A stretch of DNA of 34,901 nucleotides from Perkinsus chesapeaki ATCC PRA-425 (Eukaryota; Protista; Perkinsozoa). The stretch lies in assembly GCA_013115145.1 (NCBI GenBank), contig JAAPAO010000374.1, forward strand, positions 1-34,901, read 5' to 3'. How positions within the stretch are numbered: the stretch's first letter is position 1; each line of letters opens with the position of its first letter. The notes under the pieces are model-generated. The model was not told the origin of the DNA. It saw nothing but the letters and a program-made list of their open reading frames with translations, and did not search any database. The position numbers and the translations under genes are program-made. Below, piece by piece: positions 19,761 to 26,800 of this stretch.

Positions 19761-20898
19761 ATGGCCGCCGCCTCCGCTCCCCGGGAGCATCGCTCTGCTG
19801 ATGGTGTCCTACGCAAATTTAACACCAGTTCTAAGCAATGGGAAGTCGTACAAGAGGATCAACAACACAATAATGAAGACAACTGTAATACAGTGGCACA
19901 ACTGCATTCCTCATACCGACTTTTCCTCGGATCGCCAATGCAGGAGTTACTCTTCAGGCACGTCCTCACGGGACGAAGGAGCACCTTTGCTGGCTCTCCC
20001 TGGAAAACAATACCCTTTCCAGTACGATGGCAAAGACTTCCAAATAAATGGCAAATTCATTCGATTGCCAAATGGTGAGGAATCACGCCGACACCCAGAG
20101 GACCAGCAAGATGCCGATACGGCCGATTCGGTCTGGGACAGCTCAGTGGTGCGCTCCGAGGCTTCGGTGACGTGAAGAGTTTTGTCTATTCCCAGGTACT
20201 CGCTAAGCTTATAGAGCACAATCCTACACTAGTAAAAGGGAAACGAGTGCTTGAGCTTGGCAGTGGTGGGCCAAGATACTCTCTAGAATGGTTTTAGTCA
20301 TCCCTTCAAGGTACCGGACTTGGTGGCATATCAGCCGCCCTGTGTGGTGGTAAACAAGTTACACTCACTGACTTGCCTTATGCAATGCCTTTGCTCAATA
20401 GGAGCATCACACTTAATGGCGTTGGTGATGTAGTCCGAGCAGAGGTGCTCGACTGGGCCAATCCTCCGAACACCGCACTGCATCCACGGTAAGGCAGTGG
20501 CCCCAGCATAACTAGTAAAAATTCACCACACGGTATGGTTTTTGTGGGAACTGTATCATTCACACATTCGGGCCCCGAGGTGGGGAAGTCCGCTTCAACG
20601 TTTCCCATCGGACCTTCCCGATCACCCCTACAGGTTCGATCTAATCATCGCCTCGGACGTCATATGGTTAGAAAGCCTCGTCCCCTTGCTGGCTAACATC
20701 ATAGCTGAGAAGGAGCTCGTACCGCTGCTCATGGTGCATCAGACAAGGAGCACTCGATGCGATCAGCTCTTCAAAGATTTGCTCAAAGCACGGGGCTTTA
20801 GGATCGACAAGTTGGAGGAGCGGCTGAAGCATCCTTACTTCCTCGGTGACTTATTTCATATTCGAGCGTTTCTTATAGACACCGAGTGTAAAGAATAA
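19761..20898 (+). CDS. METTL21-like (Methyltransf_16 family) SAM-dependent protein lysine methyltransferase, multi-exon
   Basis: Spliced product gives SVWDSSVVLAKLI...GKRVLELGSGTGLGGISAA...VTLTDLP...VLDWAN...FDLIIASDVIW, which are the diagnostic motifs of this family. The 5' exon junction is not resolved. Confidence 0.85.
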
Positions 20899-21140: not shown

Positions 21141-23660
21141 TCAGTGGAGCAGCATAGGACCGACAATACCGTTGGTATCGACCAATCCCTTAACGTGATG
21201 AGCATCCAACACCAGAAGTGTGTAGGCGTCAAGCGCAGCATACCGCTCCTGGCTCTCCGATAGAGGTCTGTCAGCCCACTCGCTGCACCGCTCAGTTTTA
21301 TCAAGGAAGGCCTTCAAGAAATGAGCGACGTGACGCTGAAGGCTGCCACGCTTATCCACCTGGAGATCTATCACATCACACTCTTTAAGCTGTGGTATTC
21401 TTTCCAAGTCAGCCGAGATGCTGAACCCCAATACGCGGGGCACTTGGTGGAGCGCCTCGAAGAGCAGATCAGAGCCTGCTAGGTCTTCGACCAGCATGTC
21501 GATGAGATACACAGTATGAGGTGTTGCTATCTGGAAGAGGGCCGCGCCGGGACCAGAGCTCCATTCGACATCGATACCGATCGTCCGGTATCCTATAATA
21601 TCCCCCACGCAAAGCTCAAGCTGCGGCATAGAACATACCCACATTATGGGAACATCATTCGATAAGGTAACCACGGGCATGTCACCACGGACTATCGGTT
21701 CCAAGTGGGCAGCAGCTCCGTGCTTCCGGTGGGCATGAGAGCTGCTGCTGCCCTTCACTGGATTCCACAACTGAGCTTGCTCGGGATTCTCCTCGGCCGC
21801 TTTGAGATGGGCATCGCTCTCGACATGTTGGCACATTAGCCGCAGTCCTGCTATGAAGGCGTTGTCCTCCTTGCCGGACTTGACGTATCTCTCCACTGCA
21901 CCTTCAACACTGGCCTTACTAGGCTCGATGTCAAAGCATCTACAGAGCTTCTGGATGACCATCGGGGACACTGAGTCGTCATCCAAGCACTTGTTCACAG
22001 TCGTCACGATACTTCTACCCATGGTGCACCGCCAGCCGTACTTTCTAAGTCCCTCGACTGCCTCCAGTACGGCATGGATCTCCTCCTGGCCGAGCTCGTT
22101 CTCCACCAAACAGAGCTTCAAAACCAAGTCGCTGACCGCCTGTGAGCCTTCCTCTCTCATCAGCTCATTCAGCTCGAACAATACGGCTGTTCTGAGCCTC
22201 TGTGACTGTGCACGCCCGAGGCCACGACCGCTCTTTTTCGGCGGGTGTTTGGCAATACAAGCCGATCGCCAAGCTTCTATAGAATCGATCCATTGCTTCG
22301 TGCACTTGTGGTCCACCAAGCCCAGGAGCGGATCCGCTGGTCTCTCCAGCTTCGGCGGGGCCTTGGGCTGGTCACACATCCTCACGTCCTGGAGATCGAT
22401 GCCCTTCACAGCCTCGAATATGGAATCAACTCGCCCACTCTTCCGAAGAATCTCATAGAGGGACTCTTGGAACGCGGCGCAGCTTCTGGTCTCGACATGG
22501 CAGCAGTCCTCCGACTCTGACGGGACGTCCCTTTCGACCACCCATTTGGTCGGCAATATGAATCCTCGACTGGCCTCGACATATCTTCCACCATACTCTT
22601 TATCAGGGACGCATACAGCAACCATGACAGGTCGCTTGGAGCTCGCCTCAGTGAACTCCTGTATTGACTTTATTATGCCTTCCAAGCCGACCAATGGGAC
22701 AGGCTCGATCCCAAGATCTTCATCTCCCATCAATTCAGTGCCATCGTCGGACCCAACACCAGGGGACATCCAATACCGTTTGTGTGTTATCATAGCGAAC
22801 CGCGTTCCAGGGCCGTAGTGGTCCAATATGTCACCCAAAACCTCCTCAGAGTCCTGCTGCACCCACCAGCCCTTAGGGTGGTCCTGGCCTAGTAGCTCGT
22901 ACTTGGAAGCTTTAGCCTTACCGAGATCCCTGAAGACGTCCCAAGCGTAAAACACGCAACCTCTAAGGAGCCACATGTGCTCGACATCTCCACCGCACTT
23001 ATCAACCAGCCATTGCTTAACTGTCGGATGCTCGGCCACAGCCAGCTTCCGCCTGGTCTCGACAATACGCCACGCCAGACTCTCATACAAAAAGGGCCCG
23101 CTGAATCGTGTGGCAAGGATATCAGTCTCCTTAGGCGACATCGTAACACTAAAGTGGATGGATGCCTCCAAATGGAATCGCTCAGGCAAGACGTCATCAT
23201 CAAAGTCAGTCTTGTTGCGGACAACCAAGAACTTCAGACTCGTCAGTTCGCCGTGATTCTCATCGCTGAGAACGCCTTGTCGGACCCACACATTCTTGGC
23301 GTTGATGACCGGGTTCCGCTCTAGTAGGAATTGCAGTAGGCATGTGAAGTAGTGGCCAAGTCTGTGGGAGGTCTTGCTTTCCAGTATGTACTCTCTGAGC
23401 TCCTCAGGATGCTCATCCAGATCGGCAAACCACTCCTGTGATCGACGAACGACAAAGTCAAGCTGTGACGCGCCCCAAGTCGGGACCTGTGTGGTCTTGC
23501 TCGAGCCCTCAGAAAGCAAGTGATGTGAGCTGCAGACCCAGTGTAGATCTCTGACCAGTTTGTGACGATACGACGTGATGGGCTGTATAGGATGATGACG
23601 CTCACTGCTGGTTGAGGAGGTGACGGTTTCTATAGAGGACTCAAAGGAGCTTTCAGACAT
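21141..23660 (-). CDS. Intronless fusion: N-terminal DUF1853-like domain + C-terminal DEDDy 3'-5' exonuclease (WRN/EXD/Mut-7-like)
   Basis: DUF1853-like motifs in order: LVRDLHWV, RLGHYF, GEL, HLE, GPFLYESL, LRGCVFY, KGWW, WMSP, RGFILP.W. Exonuclease motifs: ExoI IGIDVEW, ExoII GFSISADL, ExoIII WADRPLSESQERYAALDA. Likely ATG at 23660; the ORF track starts at an upstream GTG. Confidence 0.8.
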   Translation of the reverse strand: MSESSFESSIETVTSSTSSERHHPIQPITSYRHKLVRDLHWVCSSHHLLSEGSSKTTQVPTWGASQLDFVVRRSQEWFADLDEHPEELREYILESKTSHRLGHYFTCLLQFLLERNPVINAKNVWVRQGVLSDENHGELTSLKFLVVRNKTDFDDDVLPERFHLEASIHFSVTMSPKETDILATRFSGPFLYESLAWRIVETRRKLAVAEHPTVKQWLVDKCGGDVEHMWLLRGCVFYAWDVFRDLGKAKASKYELLGQDHPKGWWVQQDSEEVLGDILDHYGPGTRFAMITHKRYWMSPGVGSDDGTELMGDEDLGIEPVPLVGLEGIIKSIQEFTEASSKRPVMVAVCVPDKEYGGRYVEASRGFILPTKWVVERDVPSESEDCCHVETRSCAAFQESLYEILRKSGRVDSIFEAVKGIDLQDVRMCDQPKAPPKLERPADPLLGLVDHKCTKQWIDSIEAWRSACIAKHPPKKSGRGLGRAQSQRLRTAVLFELNELMREEGSQAVSDLVLKLCLVENELGQEEIHAVLEAVEGLRKYGWRCTMGRSIVTTVNKCLDDDSVSPMVIQKLCRCFDIEPSKASVEGAVERYVKSGKEDNAFIAGLRLMCQHVESDAHLKAAEENPEQAQLWNPVKGSSSSHAHRKHGAAAHLEPIVRGDMPVVTLSNDVPIMWVCSMPQLELCVGDIIGYRTIGIDVEWSSGPGAALFQIATPHTVYLIDMLVEDLAGSDLLFEALHQVPRVLGFSISADLERIPQLKECDVIDLQVDKRGSLQRHVAHFLKAFLDKTERCSEWADRPLSESQERYAALDAYTLLVLDAHHVKGLVDTNGIVGPMLLH

Positions 23661-23826
23661 TCTAGGACAAACGACAGCAAGGGGAAGGCGACCTGCCGAA
23701 CATGCTTGGATGGACAGACACAACGACAACACCAAGCGCACTGAGGGTTCCTTTGCCGAGGAGCTTCAAGACGAAACAAAACGGTTAGTGTGAGAAACGG
23801 TCTTTATAATTAGAAACATTGTTTCA

Positions 23827-26800
23827 TCATCGCCTTCTTCGATTGGGGCGTGTACGATCAGTTATCTCAATTCTATCTCTTGGAACACCAACAGCTTCCA
23901 CTAGGAACTGCCTCACTGACTGAGCCACATTCCCTTGGACCTGACCAGCTCCACAGTAGAACCCCCTAGCATAGAGCATCTTACCATCACAGTGTTGGGG
24001 CCCAAAACGGGATCGTCCCGTACAGTAGCGCTCGATGCATTGTGCTTGGCCAACGCCTTTGCGAACTCCGACAGCTTCAGATGATACTTATCGACACCGG
24101 CAATTAGGGTTTGGGTCTAACGAAGCCTCCTCAAGCCTTGGATTGCACCACAACGACTTGCCTTATTCCCGGACACTTTGTCGGTGACTCTGATAGAGAT
24201 CATTGGTGGAGGACCATACTTCAGCAAACCAATAATGTCATCCGAGGAGGAAAGCTCACCACCTGAACAGGCAAGAGTTCGCCGGGCTTCCTAGCAGCTT
24301 AACTTTGCCATACTTCCAGAAGGTACTATAGCAGTGTAAAGCTCAAGGCCTCGAGACTCGAAGGCTTTGCCTATATCAGACTTGGCTACCGAATCACCAA
24401 CTTGAACCCTGAAAATATGCAGTATACGAGCTACGCTGAGATGGACTCAGGTTACTTCTTCCCGCCCTTGCTCAGCGCGCTTGCTAGACGATCGTCTACA
24501 CAGACGTCCTTGCGGGTGGCCGAGGAACTGCTGGTAGCTTCCTCGGTAGAACCCTCTAAGGCTTTTATGTATCTATTCAAAACAACATGCGTTAGGCCTC
24601 CTGTTTAATGATTCTGGACTCGGCAAATGCCTTCCTACTTGTGGAAGAGATGTCGACATTCCTTGCCGGTGAGGAAATCATGCTTGCCAAGAGTTGACCC
24701 CAACGATGCCTAATCAAATATCAGTAGCCCCCACCATAGAGACCTACTTCTATAACAGACTTCCACACTTGATGAGGTTTATACATTTCTATAATATTCA
24801 CCTTAAGTTCAGAGTCTATGTTGGCCTTCAGCCCTGAAAGATACCACTCCAAAGCCCTCATATCGGTCCACTTACCATCAACACTAGTGCTTGAAGCTCG
24901 TGTCTTGGGTCTAGGCGCGGACTTACTGCCCTTGGCTGTAATAGCGTGGGCTTGCAGCTCTCCCTTACCTTGACTGACACTAGTAATAATAACATCACCT
25001 GAATGAGCATGAGTAACGTTTCACTCTCTATGCCATTCTATCATACTCTGATAACTCCCATTATCCTCTACGGGTATGGTGAGCGAGTGAGCCCAATTAC
25101 CCTGCATAACTCTTAGCGTTGGACTGTGTGTATGTGATAGCCTTTGTGTTCGTGAGACTCTCGCCTCGACGGAATCATACGAAATTTCATCTCGCAGGCC
25201 GGGAGAGGATAATTTGATATTTACATATGCTAATATTCAAACACTAGTTGAAATTTGATATTTTTGCAATCCTGCAGGCCCCAGCAGTAAAGGGCGTTAG
25301 GCACGCATGGTGCCTCGGTGAGAGCAACAAGGCAGCTGACAGAGGCAATTCCTTCCTCGCATACCTCTCTTTTCCTTCATCTTCAGTATCCCCTCCTTCT
25401 CCAGTTCCTTCAATAGCTTAGTCACCTTACGCCAGCTAGTCTTTCTAATGTCAACTCGTATTTGCCGCTCATCCCTAATTTCCGGACCGAGCTCGTCCAG
25501 CCTACCACCACCATCGTTCACCGACTCCATCAATCTAACTGTTTACCTCGAAATCAGCTCCGTTCGTTTACACATGGTGCTGCTCTCCTTCTGAGCATTA
25601 GAGTACAACACAGCAGCTTGGATGGGCAACGCTGACTTGTCGATCTTAGCCAGAACCTCAATCACAGCGTATCTTTCAAGTAGAATTACAGTTGAGGCAT
25701 AAACACTTCTTGAAGGCTTACCTGACAAGCTCGTCATATTGTGCCTGAGTCATTTCCTCGCTCTCTTGTGTGACAGCATCTTCGGGCTCTTCACTGACTG
25801 CTGTTTCACTCGTCTGTGGCGGAAGACTGACCAAGCCAGCATCAGTCACCCTTCTTACTTGGGCGTTCTCCTGGCTTGGAGCCTCAGCGCTTTGAAAGGC
25901 ATCTCCAGCAGGTTCCTCTGCTTCCTGTTGCATGTCCTCTGCTGGTGGCAGCAGTGGTCCCTGTGGGCCCATGTGGAAGATTTGGTCCCCGACATTGTGA
26001 ACTATCTAAAAGCAACCAGAACTGTGATATTAACCACAGATCTAAGCTCTTACCTCAACTGCCTTACCAGACACACCAGTCGCTGAGCTCTCAGCCAAGG
26101 CGAGTTGACTGCTGCTCAACAATGAACGCCCTACATAGCATAAGTCTACTGATGGAGGGAAATGTGGTAGTATTACCAATAGCGACAAAAGGGCCACCAT
26201 TATCTACTCGAATCACACACACTGCTCCTGCTTGGAAGGATGGTGGTCCCTCGACTCTATTCTGAGATGGATACAGACATGTGACGCGAGAACAGAGGAA
26301 GATCGTATGCCCGCAAAGGAGGAGTAAATCTCAAGGGCAGAGATTGGGCCAGTTCAACGAAGCAAATATCTAAATCATTTATGAGAATTGACTTTGAATT
26401 CGTTCTGCTTGAGTTTACGGGTTGACTGGAGCAACTTAGTTTGTCGCTCCAGTAAACTGAGTGGAATAAGAAGGATTTCATGAAATTCATAGGATGGAGT
26501 CCATAATTAATAATTTCATAGACTGACCAGAGATAGACTGACCACGATATATAATTTATCGTCTACTTATCTCTACGCTCAACCTAGGCTGCTCTTCCTC
26601 GGTGTTACACTGGCAACGAGACGCTGACTGGGAGGTATGAGAGTACGAAGGATCTAGCTGTTCTCTGAAATGCAATCAGACACCTGGAGAGGCTGAGAAT
26701 ATGATGGGCCAGGTGAAACGTGAGTGGCAAATAGAGGATCTATTATGCTGAAAAGCACCAGGATGAAAGGATAGCAGGTATGGCGGGCAGTGGGAGGATG

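What the first reader, a model, noticed from the sequence alone, without database searches (positions are those of the whole stretch)
21141..23660. Intronless DUF1853-like + DEDDy exonuclease fusion: candidate dual-nuclease, possibly bacteria-derived
Seen: a single exon of ~840 aa in a genome where neighbouring conserved genes are heavily interrupted. The exonuclease keeps all DEDDy residues (DVE, D, Y...D). The N-terminal ~400 aa follow the motif order I recall for the mainly bacterial DUF1853 family, which has been assigned to the PD-(D/E)XK nuclease fold. The usual GELDFL and HLE(L/V)AxKF motifs read GELTSLKFL and HLEASIHF, suggesting a degenerate or re-wired active site. Inference: a horizontally acquired or retro-copied domain is fused to a WRN/EXD3(Mut-7)-like exonuclease. 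It could act in nucleic-acid defence, small-RNA trimming or repair. I know of no characterised protein with this architecture.
Basis: partly seen in the sequence, partly recalled or inferred. Interest (0 to 1): 0.7.

Follow-up and report, generated by a model that had tools for sequence, protein, structure and literature searches.

The report
Widespread protist DUF1853–exonuclease fusion gene
This intronless Perkinsus gene joins a bacterial-type nuclease-fold domain that has lost its key catalytic residue to an intact Mut-7-like RNA/DNA end-trimming enzyme; it is an ordinary, slightly trimmed member of an old, widespread but never-studied protist protein family, not a recent bacterial import.

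Summary
An uninterrupted minus-strand ORF (21141-23660, 839 aa) encodes an N-terminal Pfam DUF1853 domain (E 8.6e-20, full profile) and a C-terminal DEDDy 3'-5' exonuclease whose closest solved relative is the Nibbler/Mut-7 EXO domain. The window is from a Perkinsus species.

The fusion is neither Perkinsus-specific nor a recent transfer or retrocopy. About 50 clusters at 50% identity carry the same layout, in dinoflagellates, chromerids, oomycetes, a pelagophyte, a haptophyte and a diplonemid. They are auto-annotated as "3'-5' exonuclease domain-containing protein" or "mut-7", and none is characterised.

In a domain tree the eukaryotic DUF1853 domains form one group (100/97) separate from the bacterial stand-alone genes. 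Perkinsus sits with one dinoflagellate paralogue (100/99).

Almost every member of the eukaryotic group has lost the motif-II catalytic Asp (bacterial G-E-x-D becomes G-Q-L-K). Perkinsus also has Lys→His in motif III. The domain is nevertheless the more strongly conserved one between Perkinsus species.

Most members also carry a C-terminal YbaK/tRNA-editing domain, which Perkinsus lacks.

Best reading: an active 3'-end trimming exonuclease guided by a non-catalytic nuclease-fold domain. The substrate is unknown.

The parts
21141..23660 (-). Complete intronless CDS: 839 codons plus the stop at 21141-21143. Encodes a DUF1853 / helical / DEDDy-EXO protein.
   Evidence: Orthologues in P. olseni are about 80% identical.
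23556..23660 (-). Ser/Thr-rich N-terminal leader (residues 1-35), poorly conserved.
   Evidence: 48% aa identity to P. olseni, pN 0.35. In other family members the DUF1853 domain starts within about 5-40 residues of the N-terminus.
22557..23552 (-). DUF1853 (PF08907) domain, residues 37-368.
   Evidence: AF2 model pLDDT 90.3, pTM 0.91. TM 0.77 over 304 residues to bacterial DUF1853 models.
22878..23375 (-). PD-(D/E)XK-like alpha-beta-beta-beta-alpha-beta core, residues about 96-261.
23226..23243 (-). Motif II position, T140-S-L-K143-F-L. The catalytic Asp of bacterial G-E-x-D is Lys here.
   Evidence: K143 is invariant in A1 and A8.
23151..23174 (-). Motif III, H163-L-E165-A-S-I-H169-F. Glu is kept and the Lys of E-x-x-x-K is His.
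   Evidence: The motif definition comes from PMC3045609.
22365..22544 (-). Linker, residues 373-432. Predicted disordered, yet it is the most conserved segment between Perkinsus species.
   Evidence: pLDDT below 50. 98% aa identity, pN 0.021 with pS 0.79.
21822..22364 (-). Alpha-helical repeat region, residues 433-613. No Pfam family.
   Evidence: No Pfam hit. Eight to nine confident helices. Weak HEAT/TPR-like structural matches at TM 0.3-0.4. No detectable homology to the Mut-7 N-terminal region.
21195..21668 (-). DEDDy 3'-5' exonuclease domain, residues 665-822. Exo I is D697/E699 (21564-21572), Exo II is D751 (21408-21410), Exo III is Y807..D811 (21228-21242).
   Evidence: The family profile matches Nibbler EXO 7jw2 at E 3e-34. 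Foldseek matches 7jw2 at E 4e-9.
21144..21194 (-). Short C-terminal tail, residues 823-839. It ends in G-I-V-G-P, which aligns with the G-x-V-G-P-x-G motif of the YbaK domain in longer relatives and may be a vestige of a lost YbaK module.
   Evidence: Alignments. No YbaK coding potential downstream. This is weak evidence.
23661..23829 (-). Stop codon of the upstream eIF2D gene (TGA, 23827-23829) followed by a 166-nt intergenic spacer on the same strand.
   Evidence: Sequence read. eIF2D exon pieces.

Best explanation
The gene encodes a Perkinsus orthologue of an ancient, widespread and uncharacterised protist protein family. The usual layout of that family is an N-terminal DUF1853 domain, an alpha-helical region, a Mut-7-like DEDDy 3'-5' exonuclease and a C-terminal YbaK/tRNA-editing-like domain.

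Shown:
- The DUF1853 domain has the DUF1853 and PD-(D/E)XK fold.
- In the whole eukaryotic group the two acidic residues of motif II (bacterial G-E-x-D) are replaced by G-Q-x-K.
- Perkinsus and one dinoflagellate paralogue additionally carry Lys to His in motif III.
- The exonuclease keeps every DEDDy residue.
- The Perkinsus protein lacks the YbaK module.
- The whole protein is under purifying selection, and the DUF1853 domain more so than the exonuclease.

Inferred:
- The exonuclease is the only catalytic centre. It trims 3' ends of single-stranded nucleic acid, most likely RNA as in Nibbler/Mut-7.
- The DUF1853 domain has become a non-catalytic module that binds or positions the substrate or a partner.
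- The helical region acts as a scaffold.
- In most relatives the exonuclease is paired with a YbaK-like domain, whose known role is to act on the aminoacylated 3' end of tRNA. That suggests the ancestral substrates were tRNA or tRNA-like 3' ends. Perkinsus would then keep only the binding and trimming parts.
For: - Identity: Pfam hits. DUF1853 fold at TM 0.77 to bacterial models. PD-(D/E)XK core.
- Exonuclease: closest solved relative is Nibbler/Mut-7 EXO. DEDDy residues are intact and family-invariant.
- Breadth: about 50 representative clusters show the same layout.
- Single group and vertical pattern: the Lys-variant group has support 100/97, Perkinsus with dinoflagellates 100/99, oomycetes 100/100.
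- Active-site loss: about 125 of 159 collected domains read x-K...H-E-x-x-x-K. Only 4 stand-alone proteins read E-D...H-E-x-x-x-K. All 79 bacterial genes examined keep E-x-x-x-K.
- Constraint: pN 0.098 in DUF1853 against 0.186 in EXO, with pS about 0.8.
- YbaK module in relatives and absent here.
- Motif roles are taken from PMC3045609. The Nibbler architecture and its ssRNA specificity are taken from PMC11347159.
Against: - No biochemical data exist for any member of the family or for bacterial DUF1853.
- No RNA-seq run covered the gene, so expression is inferred only from purifying selection.
- Loss of the Asp does not prove inactivity. His163, Glu165, a basic residue in motif III and a conserved basic helix remain, so a rewired site is possible.
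- The preference for RNA over DNA is extrapolated from Nibbler. WRN-exo and EXD2, which act on DNA, are only slightly more distant.
- The helical region shows no detectable homology to the Nibbler/Mut-7 N-terminal domain.
- The exonuclease-domain tree is too weak to confirm a single fusion event (AU p 0.065 on the clean set, 0.007 on the uncleaned set).
- The tRNA idea rests on domain co-occurrence, and Perkinsus itself lacks the YbaK domain.
Confidence: 0.6

Rival explanations
1. Dual nuclease. The DUF1853 domain is still an endonuclease with a rewired, possibly metal-independent, active site built from Lys143, His163, Glu165 and His169. It works together with the exonuclease: the endonuclease cuts and the exonuclease then resects.
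For: - The substituted positions are themselves strongly conserved: Lys at motif II in nearly all members, and H-x-E is invariant.
- The domain is under stronger constraint than the exonuclease.
- From general knowledge, some PD-(D/E)XK-fold enzymes such as the tRNA-splicing endonuclease use His/Lys/Tyr chemistry without a metal.
Against: - Both acidic residues of motif II are lost across the whole family. In canonical PD-(D/E)XK enzymes that Asp is a metal ligand (PMC3045609).
- Motif III Lys is variable within the family: K, H, Q, N or D. That is unusual for a catalytic residue.
- There is no experimental precedent for this site.
Confidence: 0.15
2. Recent horizontal transfer from bacteria, or a retro-copy, in the Perkinsus lineage. 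This would explain the lack of introns and would have created a lineage-specific fusion.
For: - The gene has no introns although the adjacent eIF2D has many.
- DUF1853 is overwhelmingly bacterial: at least 471 bacterial loci.
- The stand-alone, canonical-motif sister of the eukaryotic group (P0106) lies on a probably bacterial contig.
Against: - The same three-part layout occurs in many eukaryotic lineages.
- The Perkinsus domain groups with dinoflagellates, its organismal relatives, at 100/99, inside a eukaryote-only group at 100/97.
- The derived G-Q-L-K motif is shared by the eukaryotes and absent from the bacteria.
- Position next to eIF2D is conserved in P. olseni.
- The alignment with Symbiodinium runs through all three regions.
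- Intron loss alone does not indicate transfer.
Confidence: 0.03
3. A DNA-repair or replication-associated exonuclease (WRN-exo/EXD2-like) acting on DNA ends. The DUF1853 domain would recognise DNA structures, as many PD-(D/E)XK domains do.
For: - WRN exonuclease (E 1e-26) and EXD2 (E 4e-25) are only a little more distant than Nibbler (E 3e-34) for the family profile.
- PD-(D/E)XK-fold matches are mostly DNA enzymes.
Against: - The best sequence and structure matches are the RNA-specific Nibbler EXO domain (PMC11347159).
- The best exonuclease-only database hits are Mut-7/EXD3 proteins carrying Mut7-C.
- Most family members carry a YbaK/tRNA-editing-like domain, an RNA-3'-end module.
Confidence: 0.2

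Closest known systems
Uncharacterised eukaryotic DUF1853 + 3'-5' exonuclease (+ YbaK) proteins. Examples: Symbiodinium natans 'mut-7' (P0005), Polarella glacialis A0A813HUF5 (P0011), Vitrella brassicaformis A0A0G4F965 (P0019), Lagenidium giganteum A0AAV2YIB5 (P0020), and Phytophthora, Saprolegnia and Aphanomyces proteins.
   Same: - Same domain order and spacing.
- Same derived Lys at motif II.
- Same DEDDy exonuclease.
- Alignable end to end with the dinoflagellate proteins.
- Same group in the DUF1853 tree.
   Different: - Perkinsus lacks the C-terminal YbaK/tRNA_edit domain found in most members.
- It has His instead of Lys in motif III, a change shared only with one dinoflagellate paralogue.
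Bacterial DUF1853 / COG3782 stand-alone proteins (about 300 aa, mostly Pseudomonadota)
   Same: - Full-length Pfam match.
- Same predicted fold, TM 0.77.
- Shared H-x-E, G-P and E-x-S-R-G-F positions.
   Different: - The bacterial proteins are single-domain and keep G-E-x-D and E-x-x-x-K.
- The window's protein has Lys at the Asp position and His at the Lys position, and is fused to an exonuclease.
- The bacterial function is itself unknown (PMC3424549). The gene neighbourhood gave no clue.
Nibbler / MUT-7 / EXD3 DEDDy exoribonucleases
   Same: - Closest solved exonuclease domain: 7jw2 at E 3e-34 by family profile, Foldseek E 4e-9 at 25% identity.
- A helical region precedes the EXO domain in both.
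- A YbaK-like domain is also found in at least one Mut7-C-bearing protein, P0155.
   Different: - No Mut7-C domain.
- The helical region is not detectably homologous to the Mut-7 N-terminal domain (hhalign probability 0.1%).
- An extra N-terminal DUF1853 domain.
- The EXO tree does not place the fusion family inside the Mut7-C group.
WRN exonuclease domain and EXD2
   Same: Same DEDDy fold and catalytic residues.
   Different: - More distant than Nibbler.
- No helicase or other WRN/EXD2 context.

Membership tests
Pfam DUF1853 (PF08907) | Profile match above the gathering score over the whole domain | tested here: met
   71.9 bits against 25, E 8.6e-20, profile positions 1-284 of 285.
Pfam DUF1853 (PF08907) | Same three-dimensional fold as bacterial members | tested here: met
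   AF2 model (pLDDT 90.3) against the ESM Atlas bacterial DUF1853 cluster: TM 0.77, 304 residues, rmsd 2.9.
Pfam DUF1853 (PF08907) | Motif II Asp (G-E-[LF]-D) | tested here: not met
   T-S-L-K143. Lys is at the Asp position, as in nearly all eukaryotic members.
Pfam DUF1853 (PF08907) | Motif III E-x-x-x-K (PMC3045609) | tested here: not met
   E165 is kept and Lys is replaced by H169. All 79 bacterial genes examined keep E-x-x-x-K.
PD-(D/E)XK superfamily | Alpha-beta-beta-beta-alpha-beta core fold | tested here: met
PD-(D/E)XK superfamily | Catalytic D...(D/E)-x-K metal-binding signature | tested here: not met
   Asp to Lys143 and Lys to His169.
DEDDy 3'-5' exonuclease (PF01612) | Profile match and the five catalytic residues D-E-D-Y-D | tested here: met
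   32.4 bits against 23.6. D697, E699, D751, Y807 and D811 are present and conserved.
DEDDy 3'-5' exonuclease (PF01612) | Exonuclease activity | not testable with these tools
   Needs an enzyme assay.
MUT-7 / Nibbler / EXD3 family | EXO domain closest to the Mut-7/Nibbler EXO domain | tested here: met
   7jw2 is the best hit by sequence profile (E 3e-34) and by structure (E 4e-9).
MUT-7 / Nibbler / EXD3 family | Homologous HEAT-like N-terminal domain | tested here: not met
   hhalign of the helical region against the N-terminal regions of Mut7-C-bearing proteins: probability 0.1%. Only generic helical-repeat resemblance.
MUT-7 / Nibbler / EXD3 family | Mut7-C domain (present in MUT-7/EXD3, absent in Nibbler) | tested here: not met
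   No PF01927 hit. The protein ends 17 residues after the EXO domain.
Eukaryotic DUF1853-EXO-YbaK fusion family (uncharacterised) | N-terminal Lys-variant DUF1853 with a DEDDy EXO domain about 300-350 residues downstream | tested here: met
Eukaryotic DUF1853-EXO-YbaK fusion family (uncharacterised) | Falls inside the eukaryotic group in the DUF1853 tree | tested here: met
   Group support 100/97. Perkinsus with dinoflagellates at 100/99.
Eukaryotic DUF1853-EXO-YbaK fusion family (uncharacterised) | C-terminal YbaK/tRNA_edit (PF04073) domain | tested here: not met
   Absent from the protein and from the DNA downstream. It is also undetected in some other members, such as P0014 and P0017, so it is common but not universal.

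The most novel reading that the evidence does not exclude
The DUF1853-helical-EXO-YbaK family is a previously unrecognised eukaryotic machine for surveillance or turnover of tRNA or tRNA-like small-RNA 3' ends. A bacterial PD-(D/E)XK nuclease was converted, by an early E-x-D to Q-x-K change, into an RNA-recognition module or a metal-independent RNase. The YbaK domain strips the aminoacyl group and the Mut-7-like exonuclease then trims the exposed 3' end. Perkinsus carries a reduced version without the deacylase.
Probability: 0.2. Interest if true: 0.6.

Novelty: new member of a known kind. Interest (0 to 1): 0.38.

Why it matters
For the window itself the result is mostly deflationary. The gene is a normal, vertically inherited member of a family that is already catalogued by domain databases and auto-annotated in dozens of genomes.

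What is worth keeping is at the family level. A protein present throughout oomycetes, dinoflagellates, chromerids, Perkinsus and other protists, several of them important pathogens or symbionts, has never been studied.

Its nuclease-fold domain carries a family-wide replacement of the catalytic Asp yet remains strongly constrained. It is usually coupled to a tRNA-editing-like domain.

That makes a concrete, testable hypothesis about RNA 3'-end metabolism in these lineages. It also gives a clean example of a bacterial-type nuclease domain re-used as a probable pseudo-enzyme.

Tried and rejected
- **Transcript evidence.** The run search listed only two tiny runs of the same species label. One contig lay on an eIF2D exon junction and none lay on this gene. 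Expression and transcript ends therefore remain untested.
- **Word-index searches.** The whole protein and the isolated N-domain found only Perkinsus and one Symbiodinium protein. The exhaustive HMMER search was needed to see the family.
- **Helical region as the Nibbler/Mut-7 N-terminal domain.** Rejected at the sequence-profile level.
- **Bacterial gene neighbourhood of DUF1853.** Neighbours are heterogeneous: rhomboid, chromate transporter, phosphoesterase, cNMP-binding/rhodanese, beta-lactamase, GNAT. No functional clue.
- **Exonuclease-domain phylogeny.** The tree is poorly resolved. A single clade is rejected (p 0.007) when possibly truncated gene models are counted as outgroups, and not rejected (p 0.065) with a cleaned set. 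The result is inconclusive.
- **dN/dS.** Synonymous sites between the two Perkinsus species are saturated, so only pN against pS could be reported.
- **Hidden YbaK exon downstream.** None found.
- **Upstream GTG-extended ORF (to 23741).** Rejected as coding, because the extension is not conserved in P. olseni.
Full report
**What is there.** The minus strand carries one uninterrupted ORF, 21141..23741. The first ATG is at 23660 and gives an 839-aa protein. The GTG-extended upstream part is not conserved in the orthologues, whereas the Met start is.

Pfam finds two domains:
- DUF1853 (PF08907): E 8.6e-20, residues 37-368, covering the whole profile.
- DNA_pol_A_exo1 (PF01612): E 9.9e-8, residues 694-818.

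The 330 residues between them hit no family. All DEDDy residues are present: D697 and E699, D751, Y807...D811.

The nearest proteins are about 80% identical orthologues from Perkinsus olseni, so the window comes from another Perkinsus species.

The upstream gene on the same strand is eIF2D. Its last exon ends with TGA at 23827-23829, 166 nt before the ATG. tblastn shows eIF2D broken into at least 10 pieces over about 8 kb, while this gene is a single 773-aa HSP. One eIF2D intron is confirmed by an RNA contig.

**How widespread it is.** Word-index searches saw only Perkinsus and one Symbiodinium protein with the same two Pfam domains. That protein aligns with the Perkinsus protein along its whole length, middle region included.

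An exhaustive HMMER search with a three-sequence profile found 57 representatives at E≤1e-30. Local domain HMMs showed that about 50 of the best 150 representatives have DUF1853 at the N-terminus and the exonuclease 300-350 residues further on.

Named members come from:
- Dinoflagellates: Symbiodinium, Breviolum, Effrenium, Polarella, Alexandrium.
- Chromerids: Vitrella, Chromera.
- Essentially all sampled oomycetes: Phytophthora, Pythium, Lagenidium, Bremia, Plasmopara, Peronospora, Saprolegnia, Achlya, Aphanomyces.
- A pelagophyte: Chrysophaeum.
- A haptophyte: Diacronema.
- A diplonemid transcriptome: Namystynia.

Their database names are automatic: "3'-5' exonuclease domain-containing protein", occasionally "mut-7". 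[quoted passage not shown] No paper in the searchable library treats the architecture or any member.

**The N-terminal domain.**
- *Fold.* An AlphaFold2 model built on a 36-sequence alignment is confident (pLDDT 90.3, pTM 0.91). It superposes on predicted bacterial DUF1853 structures at TM 0.77 over 304 residues.

**The active site.** The 2011 paper defines the DUF1853 motifs as I (E/Q), II (D) and III (E-x-x-x-K).
- *Bacteria.* All 79 bacterial genes translated from genome contigs have E-x-x-x-K, and most show G-E-[LFI]-D.
- *Eukaryotic fusion proteins.* The homologous motif II reads G-Q-L-K-[FL]-[VL].
- *Counts.* Of 159 collected domains, about 125 read x-K...H-E-x-x-x-K. Only four stand-alone proteins read E-D...H-E-x-x-x-K.
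- *Perkinsus.* It reads T-S-L-K143 and H163-x-E165-x-x-x-H169. The Lys→His change in motif III is shared with about 15 sequences, which are Perkinsus and one dinoflagellate paralogue.

The loss of the metal-binding Asp is thus an old, family-wide feature and not a Perkinsus degeneration. The domain is still constrained. Against P. olseni, synonymous sites are saturated (pS about 0.8). Non-synonymous divergence is 0.098 in DUF1853 (0.086 in the core), against 0.163 in the helical region and 0.186 in the exonuclease.

**Origin.** A careful maximum-likelihood tree was built from 32 eukaryotic and 45 canonical-motif domains (325 columns, LG+C20). Support values are ultrafast bootstrap / SH-aLRT (the quick version is).
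- The eukaryotic Lys-variant sequences lie on one side of a branch (100/97).
- Inside that group, Perkinsus joins Alexandrium, Effrenium and a metagenomic relative (100/99).
- Oomycetes form a group (100/100), and the pelagophyte-like sequences also group together.
- Dinoflagellates have two paralogues.
- The nearest canonical-motif protein is a 366-aa stand-alone protein, P0106 (99/95).

P0106 lies on a 67% GC metagenomic contig next to uninterrupted RsmH and TrmA genes that pass NCBI's equivalog cut-offs. It is probably bacterial, but this is not proven.

This pattern fits one ancient fusion followed by mainly vertical descent. It contradicts a recent transfer or retrocopy in Perkinsus. A bacterial source of the domain before the fusion is plausible, because bacteria hold at least 471 stand-alone loci. 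The tree is unrooted, however.

The exonuclease-domain tree (about 170 columns) is too weak to help. One clade is rejected when possibly truncated models count as outgroups (p 0.007) and not rejected with a cleaned set (p 0.065).

**The rest of the protein.**
- *Exonuclease, sequence.* The family profile's exonuclease matches Nibbler EXO best (7jw2, E 3e-34), then WRN-exo (1e-26) and EXD2 (4e-25).
- *Exonuclease, structure.* The model agrees, matching 7jw2 at E 4e-9 and 25% identity.
- *Nearest exonuclease-only proteins.* The best such database hits are genuine Mut-7/EXD3 proteins with a Mut7-C domain.
- *Helical region.* Residues 433-613 fold into eight or nine confident helices with only generic HEAT/TPR-like resemblance. 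Profile-profile comparison with the N-terminal regions of those Mut-7 proteins finds nothing (probability 0.1%). The Nibbler-like "helical domain + EXO" layout is therefore an analogy, not shown homology.
- *YbaK module.* Most family members carry a further C-terminal YbaK/tRNA_edit domain (PF04073). The Perkinsus protein stops 17 residues after the exonuclease. The downstream DNA has no such coding potential, and a convergent gene starts about 250 nt away. Its last residues (G-I-V-G-P...) align with the YbaK G-x-V-G-P-x-G motif in two alignments. This may be a vestige, but the evidence is weak.

**Mechanism.**

Shown:
- An intact DEDDy site of the Mut-7/Nibbler type.
- A DUF1853/PD-(D/E)XK-fold domain without its motif-II acidic residues.
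- Purifying selection on both domains.

Inferred:
- The exonuclease is the catalytic part and trims 3' ends. The substrate is probably RNA, because Nibbler is specific for ssRNA (PMC11347159).
- The DUF1853 domain serves as a non-catalytic recognition or docking module.
- YbaK-type domains act on the aminoacylated 3' end of tRNA (general knowledge of the family). The usual family layout therefore hints at tRNA or tRNA-like 3' ends as ancestral substrates. Perkinsus keeps only the binding and trimming parts.

I give this overall reading 0.6. The identity and evolutionary statements are far more certain than the functional ones. Rivals are a rewired dual nuclease (0.15), a DNA-end enzyme (0.2, differing only in substrate) and recent transfer or retrocopy (0.03).

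**Limits.**
- No RNA run covers the gene.
- Taxon names were obtained for only about 30 clusters outside the oomycetes.
- The diplonemid record is a transcriptome and groups with a dinoflagellate paralogue, so contamination or transfer cannot be excluded there.

**Verdict.** The gene is a new, YbaK-less member of a catalogued but uncharacterised eukaryotic family. Interest is moderate to low for the locus. It is higher for the family-level observations: the Asp→Lys switch and the recurrent YbaK coupling.

Noticed in passing
window 23661-23829 (-); proteins P0002 and P0004: Two P. olseni GenBank gene models (1431 and 1387 aa) fuse eIF2D (PUA/SUI1 domains) to this DUF1853-exonuclease gene. In the window eIF2D ends with a normal SUI1 C-terminus and a TGA at 23827-23829, 166 nt before the ATG. 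The fused models therefore look like annotation read-through. The adjacency of the two genes is conserved between species.
   Followed up: partly
window 24117-24161 (-): A 45-nt eIF2D intron is supported by one RNA contig. Its ends read CT..GC on the + strand, which is GC...AG on the coding strand, an apparently non-canonical 5' splice site. The junction position is ambiguous by up to 2 nt.
   Followed up: no
window 22365-22544 (-), residues 373-432: The linker after the DUF1853 domain is predicted disordered (pLDDT below 50). Yet it is 98% identical to P. olseni (pN 0.021 with pS 0.79), far more conserved than either catalytic-type domain. It is poorly conserved in dinoflagellates. It could be a Perkinsus-specific interaction motif.
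   Followed up: no
proteins P0155, P0095 (representative-library hits): A YbaK/tRNA_edit domain also occurs in exonuclease proteins without DUF1853. P0155 is EXO + tRNA_edit + Mut7-C, and P0095 is tRNA_edit + EXO. The pairing of a Mut-7-like exonuclease with a YbaK-like domain is therefore recurrent.
   Followed up: partly
proteins P0005/P0010/P0011/P0016 versus P0012/P0013/P0014: Dinoflagellates carry two paralogues of the fusion gene. One keeps Lys in motif III and groups with the diplonemid sequence. The other has His or Gln there and groups with Perkinsus (100/99).
   Followed up: partly
locus L081 (metagenomic contig), gene 1690-2790: P0106 is the canonical-motif DUF1853 protein closest to the eukaryotic group. 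It lies on a 67% GC contig between RsmH and TrmA genes, with a 2.2-kb stretch of only short unassignable ORFs. Its organism is unknown.
   Followed up: partly
window 20542-20898 (+): A convergent ORF fragment with a methyltransferase-like motif (D-L-I-I-A-S-D-V-I-W) starts about 250 nt from the stop codon of the gene studied. It is probably one exon of a neighbouring gene.
   Followed up: no
oomycete proteins P0224-P0229, P0048, P0079: Several oomycetes also have 500-700-aa proteins with only the DUF1853 domain, for example Phytophthora infestans PITG_13295. They may be true exonuclease-less paralogues or truncated gene models.
   Followed up: no
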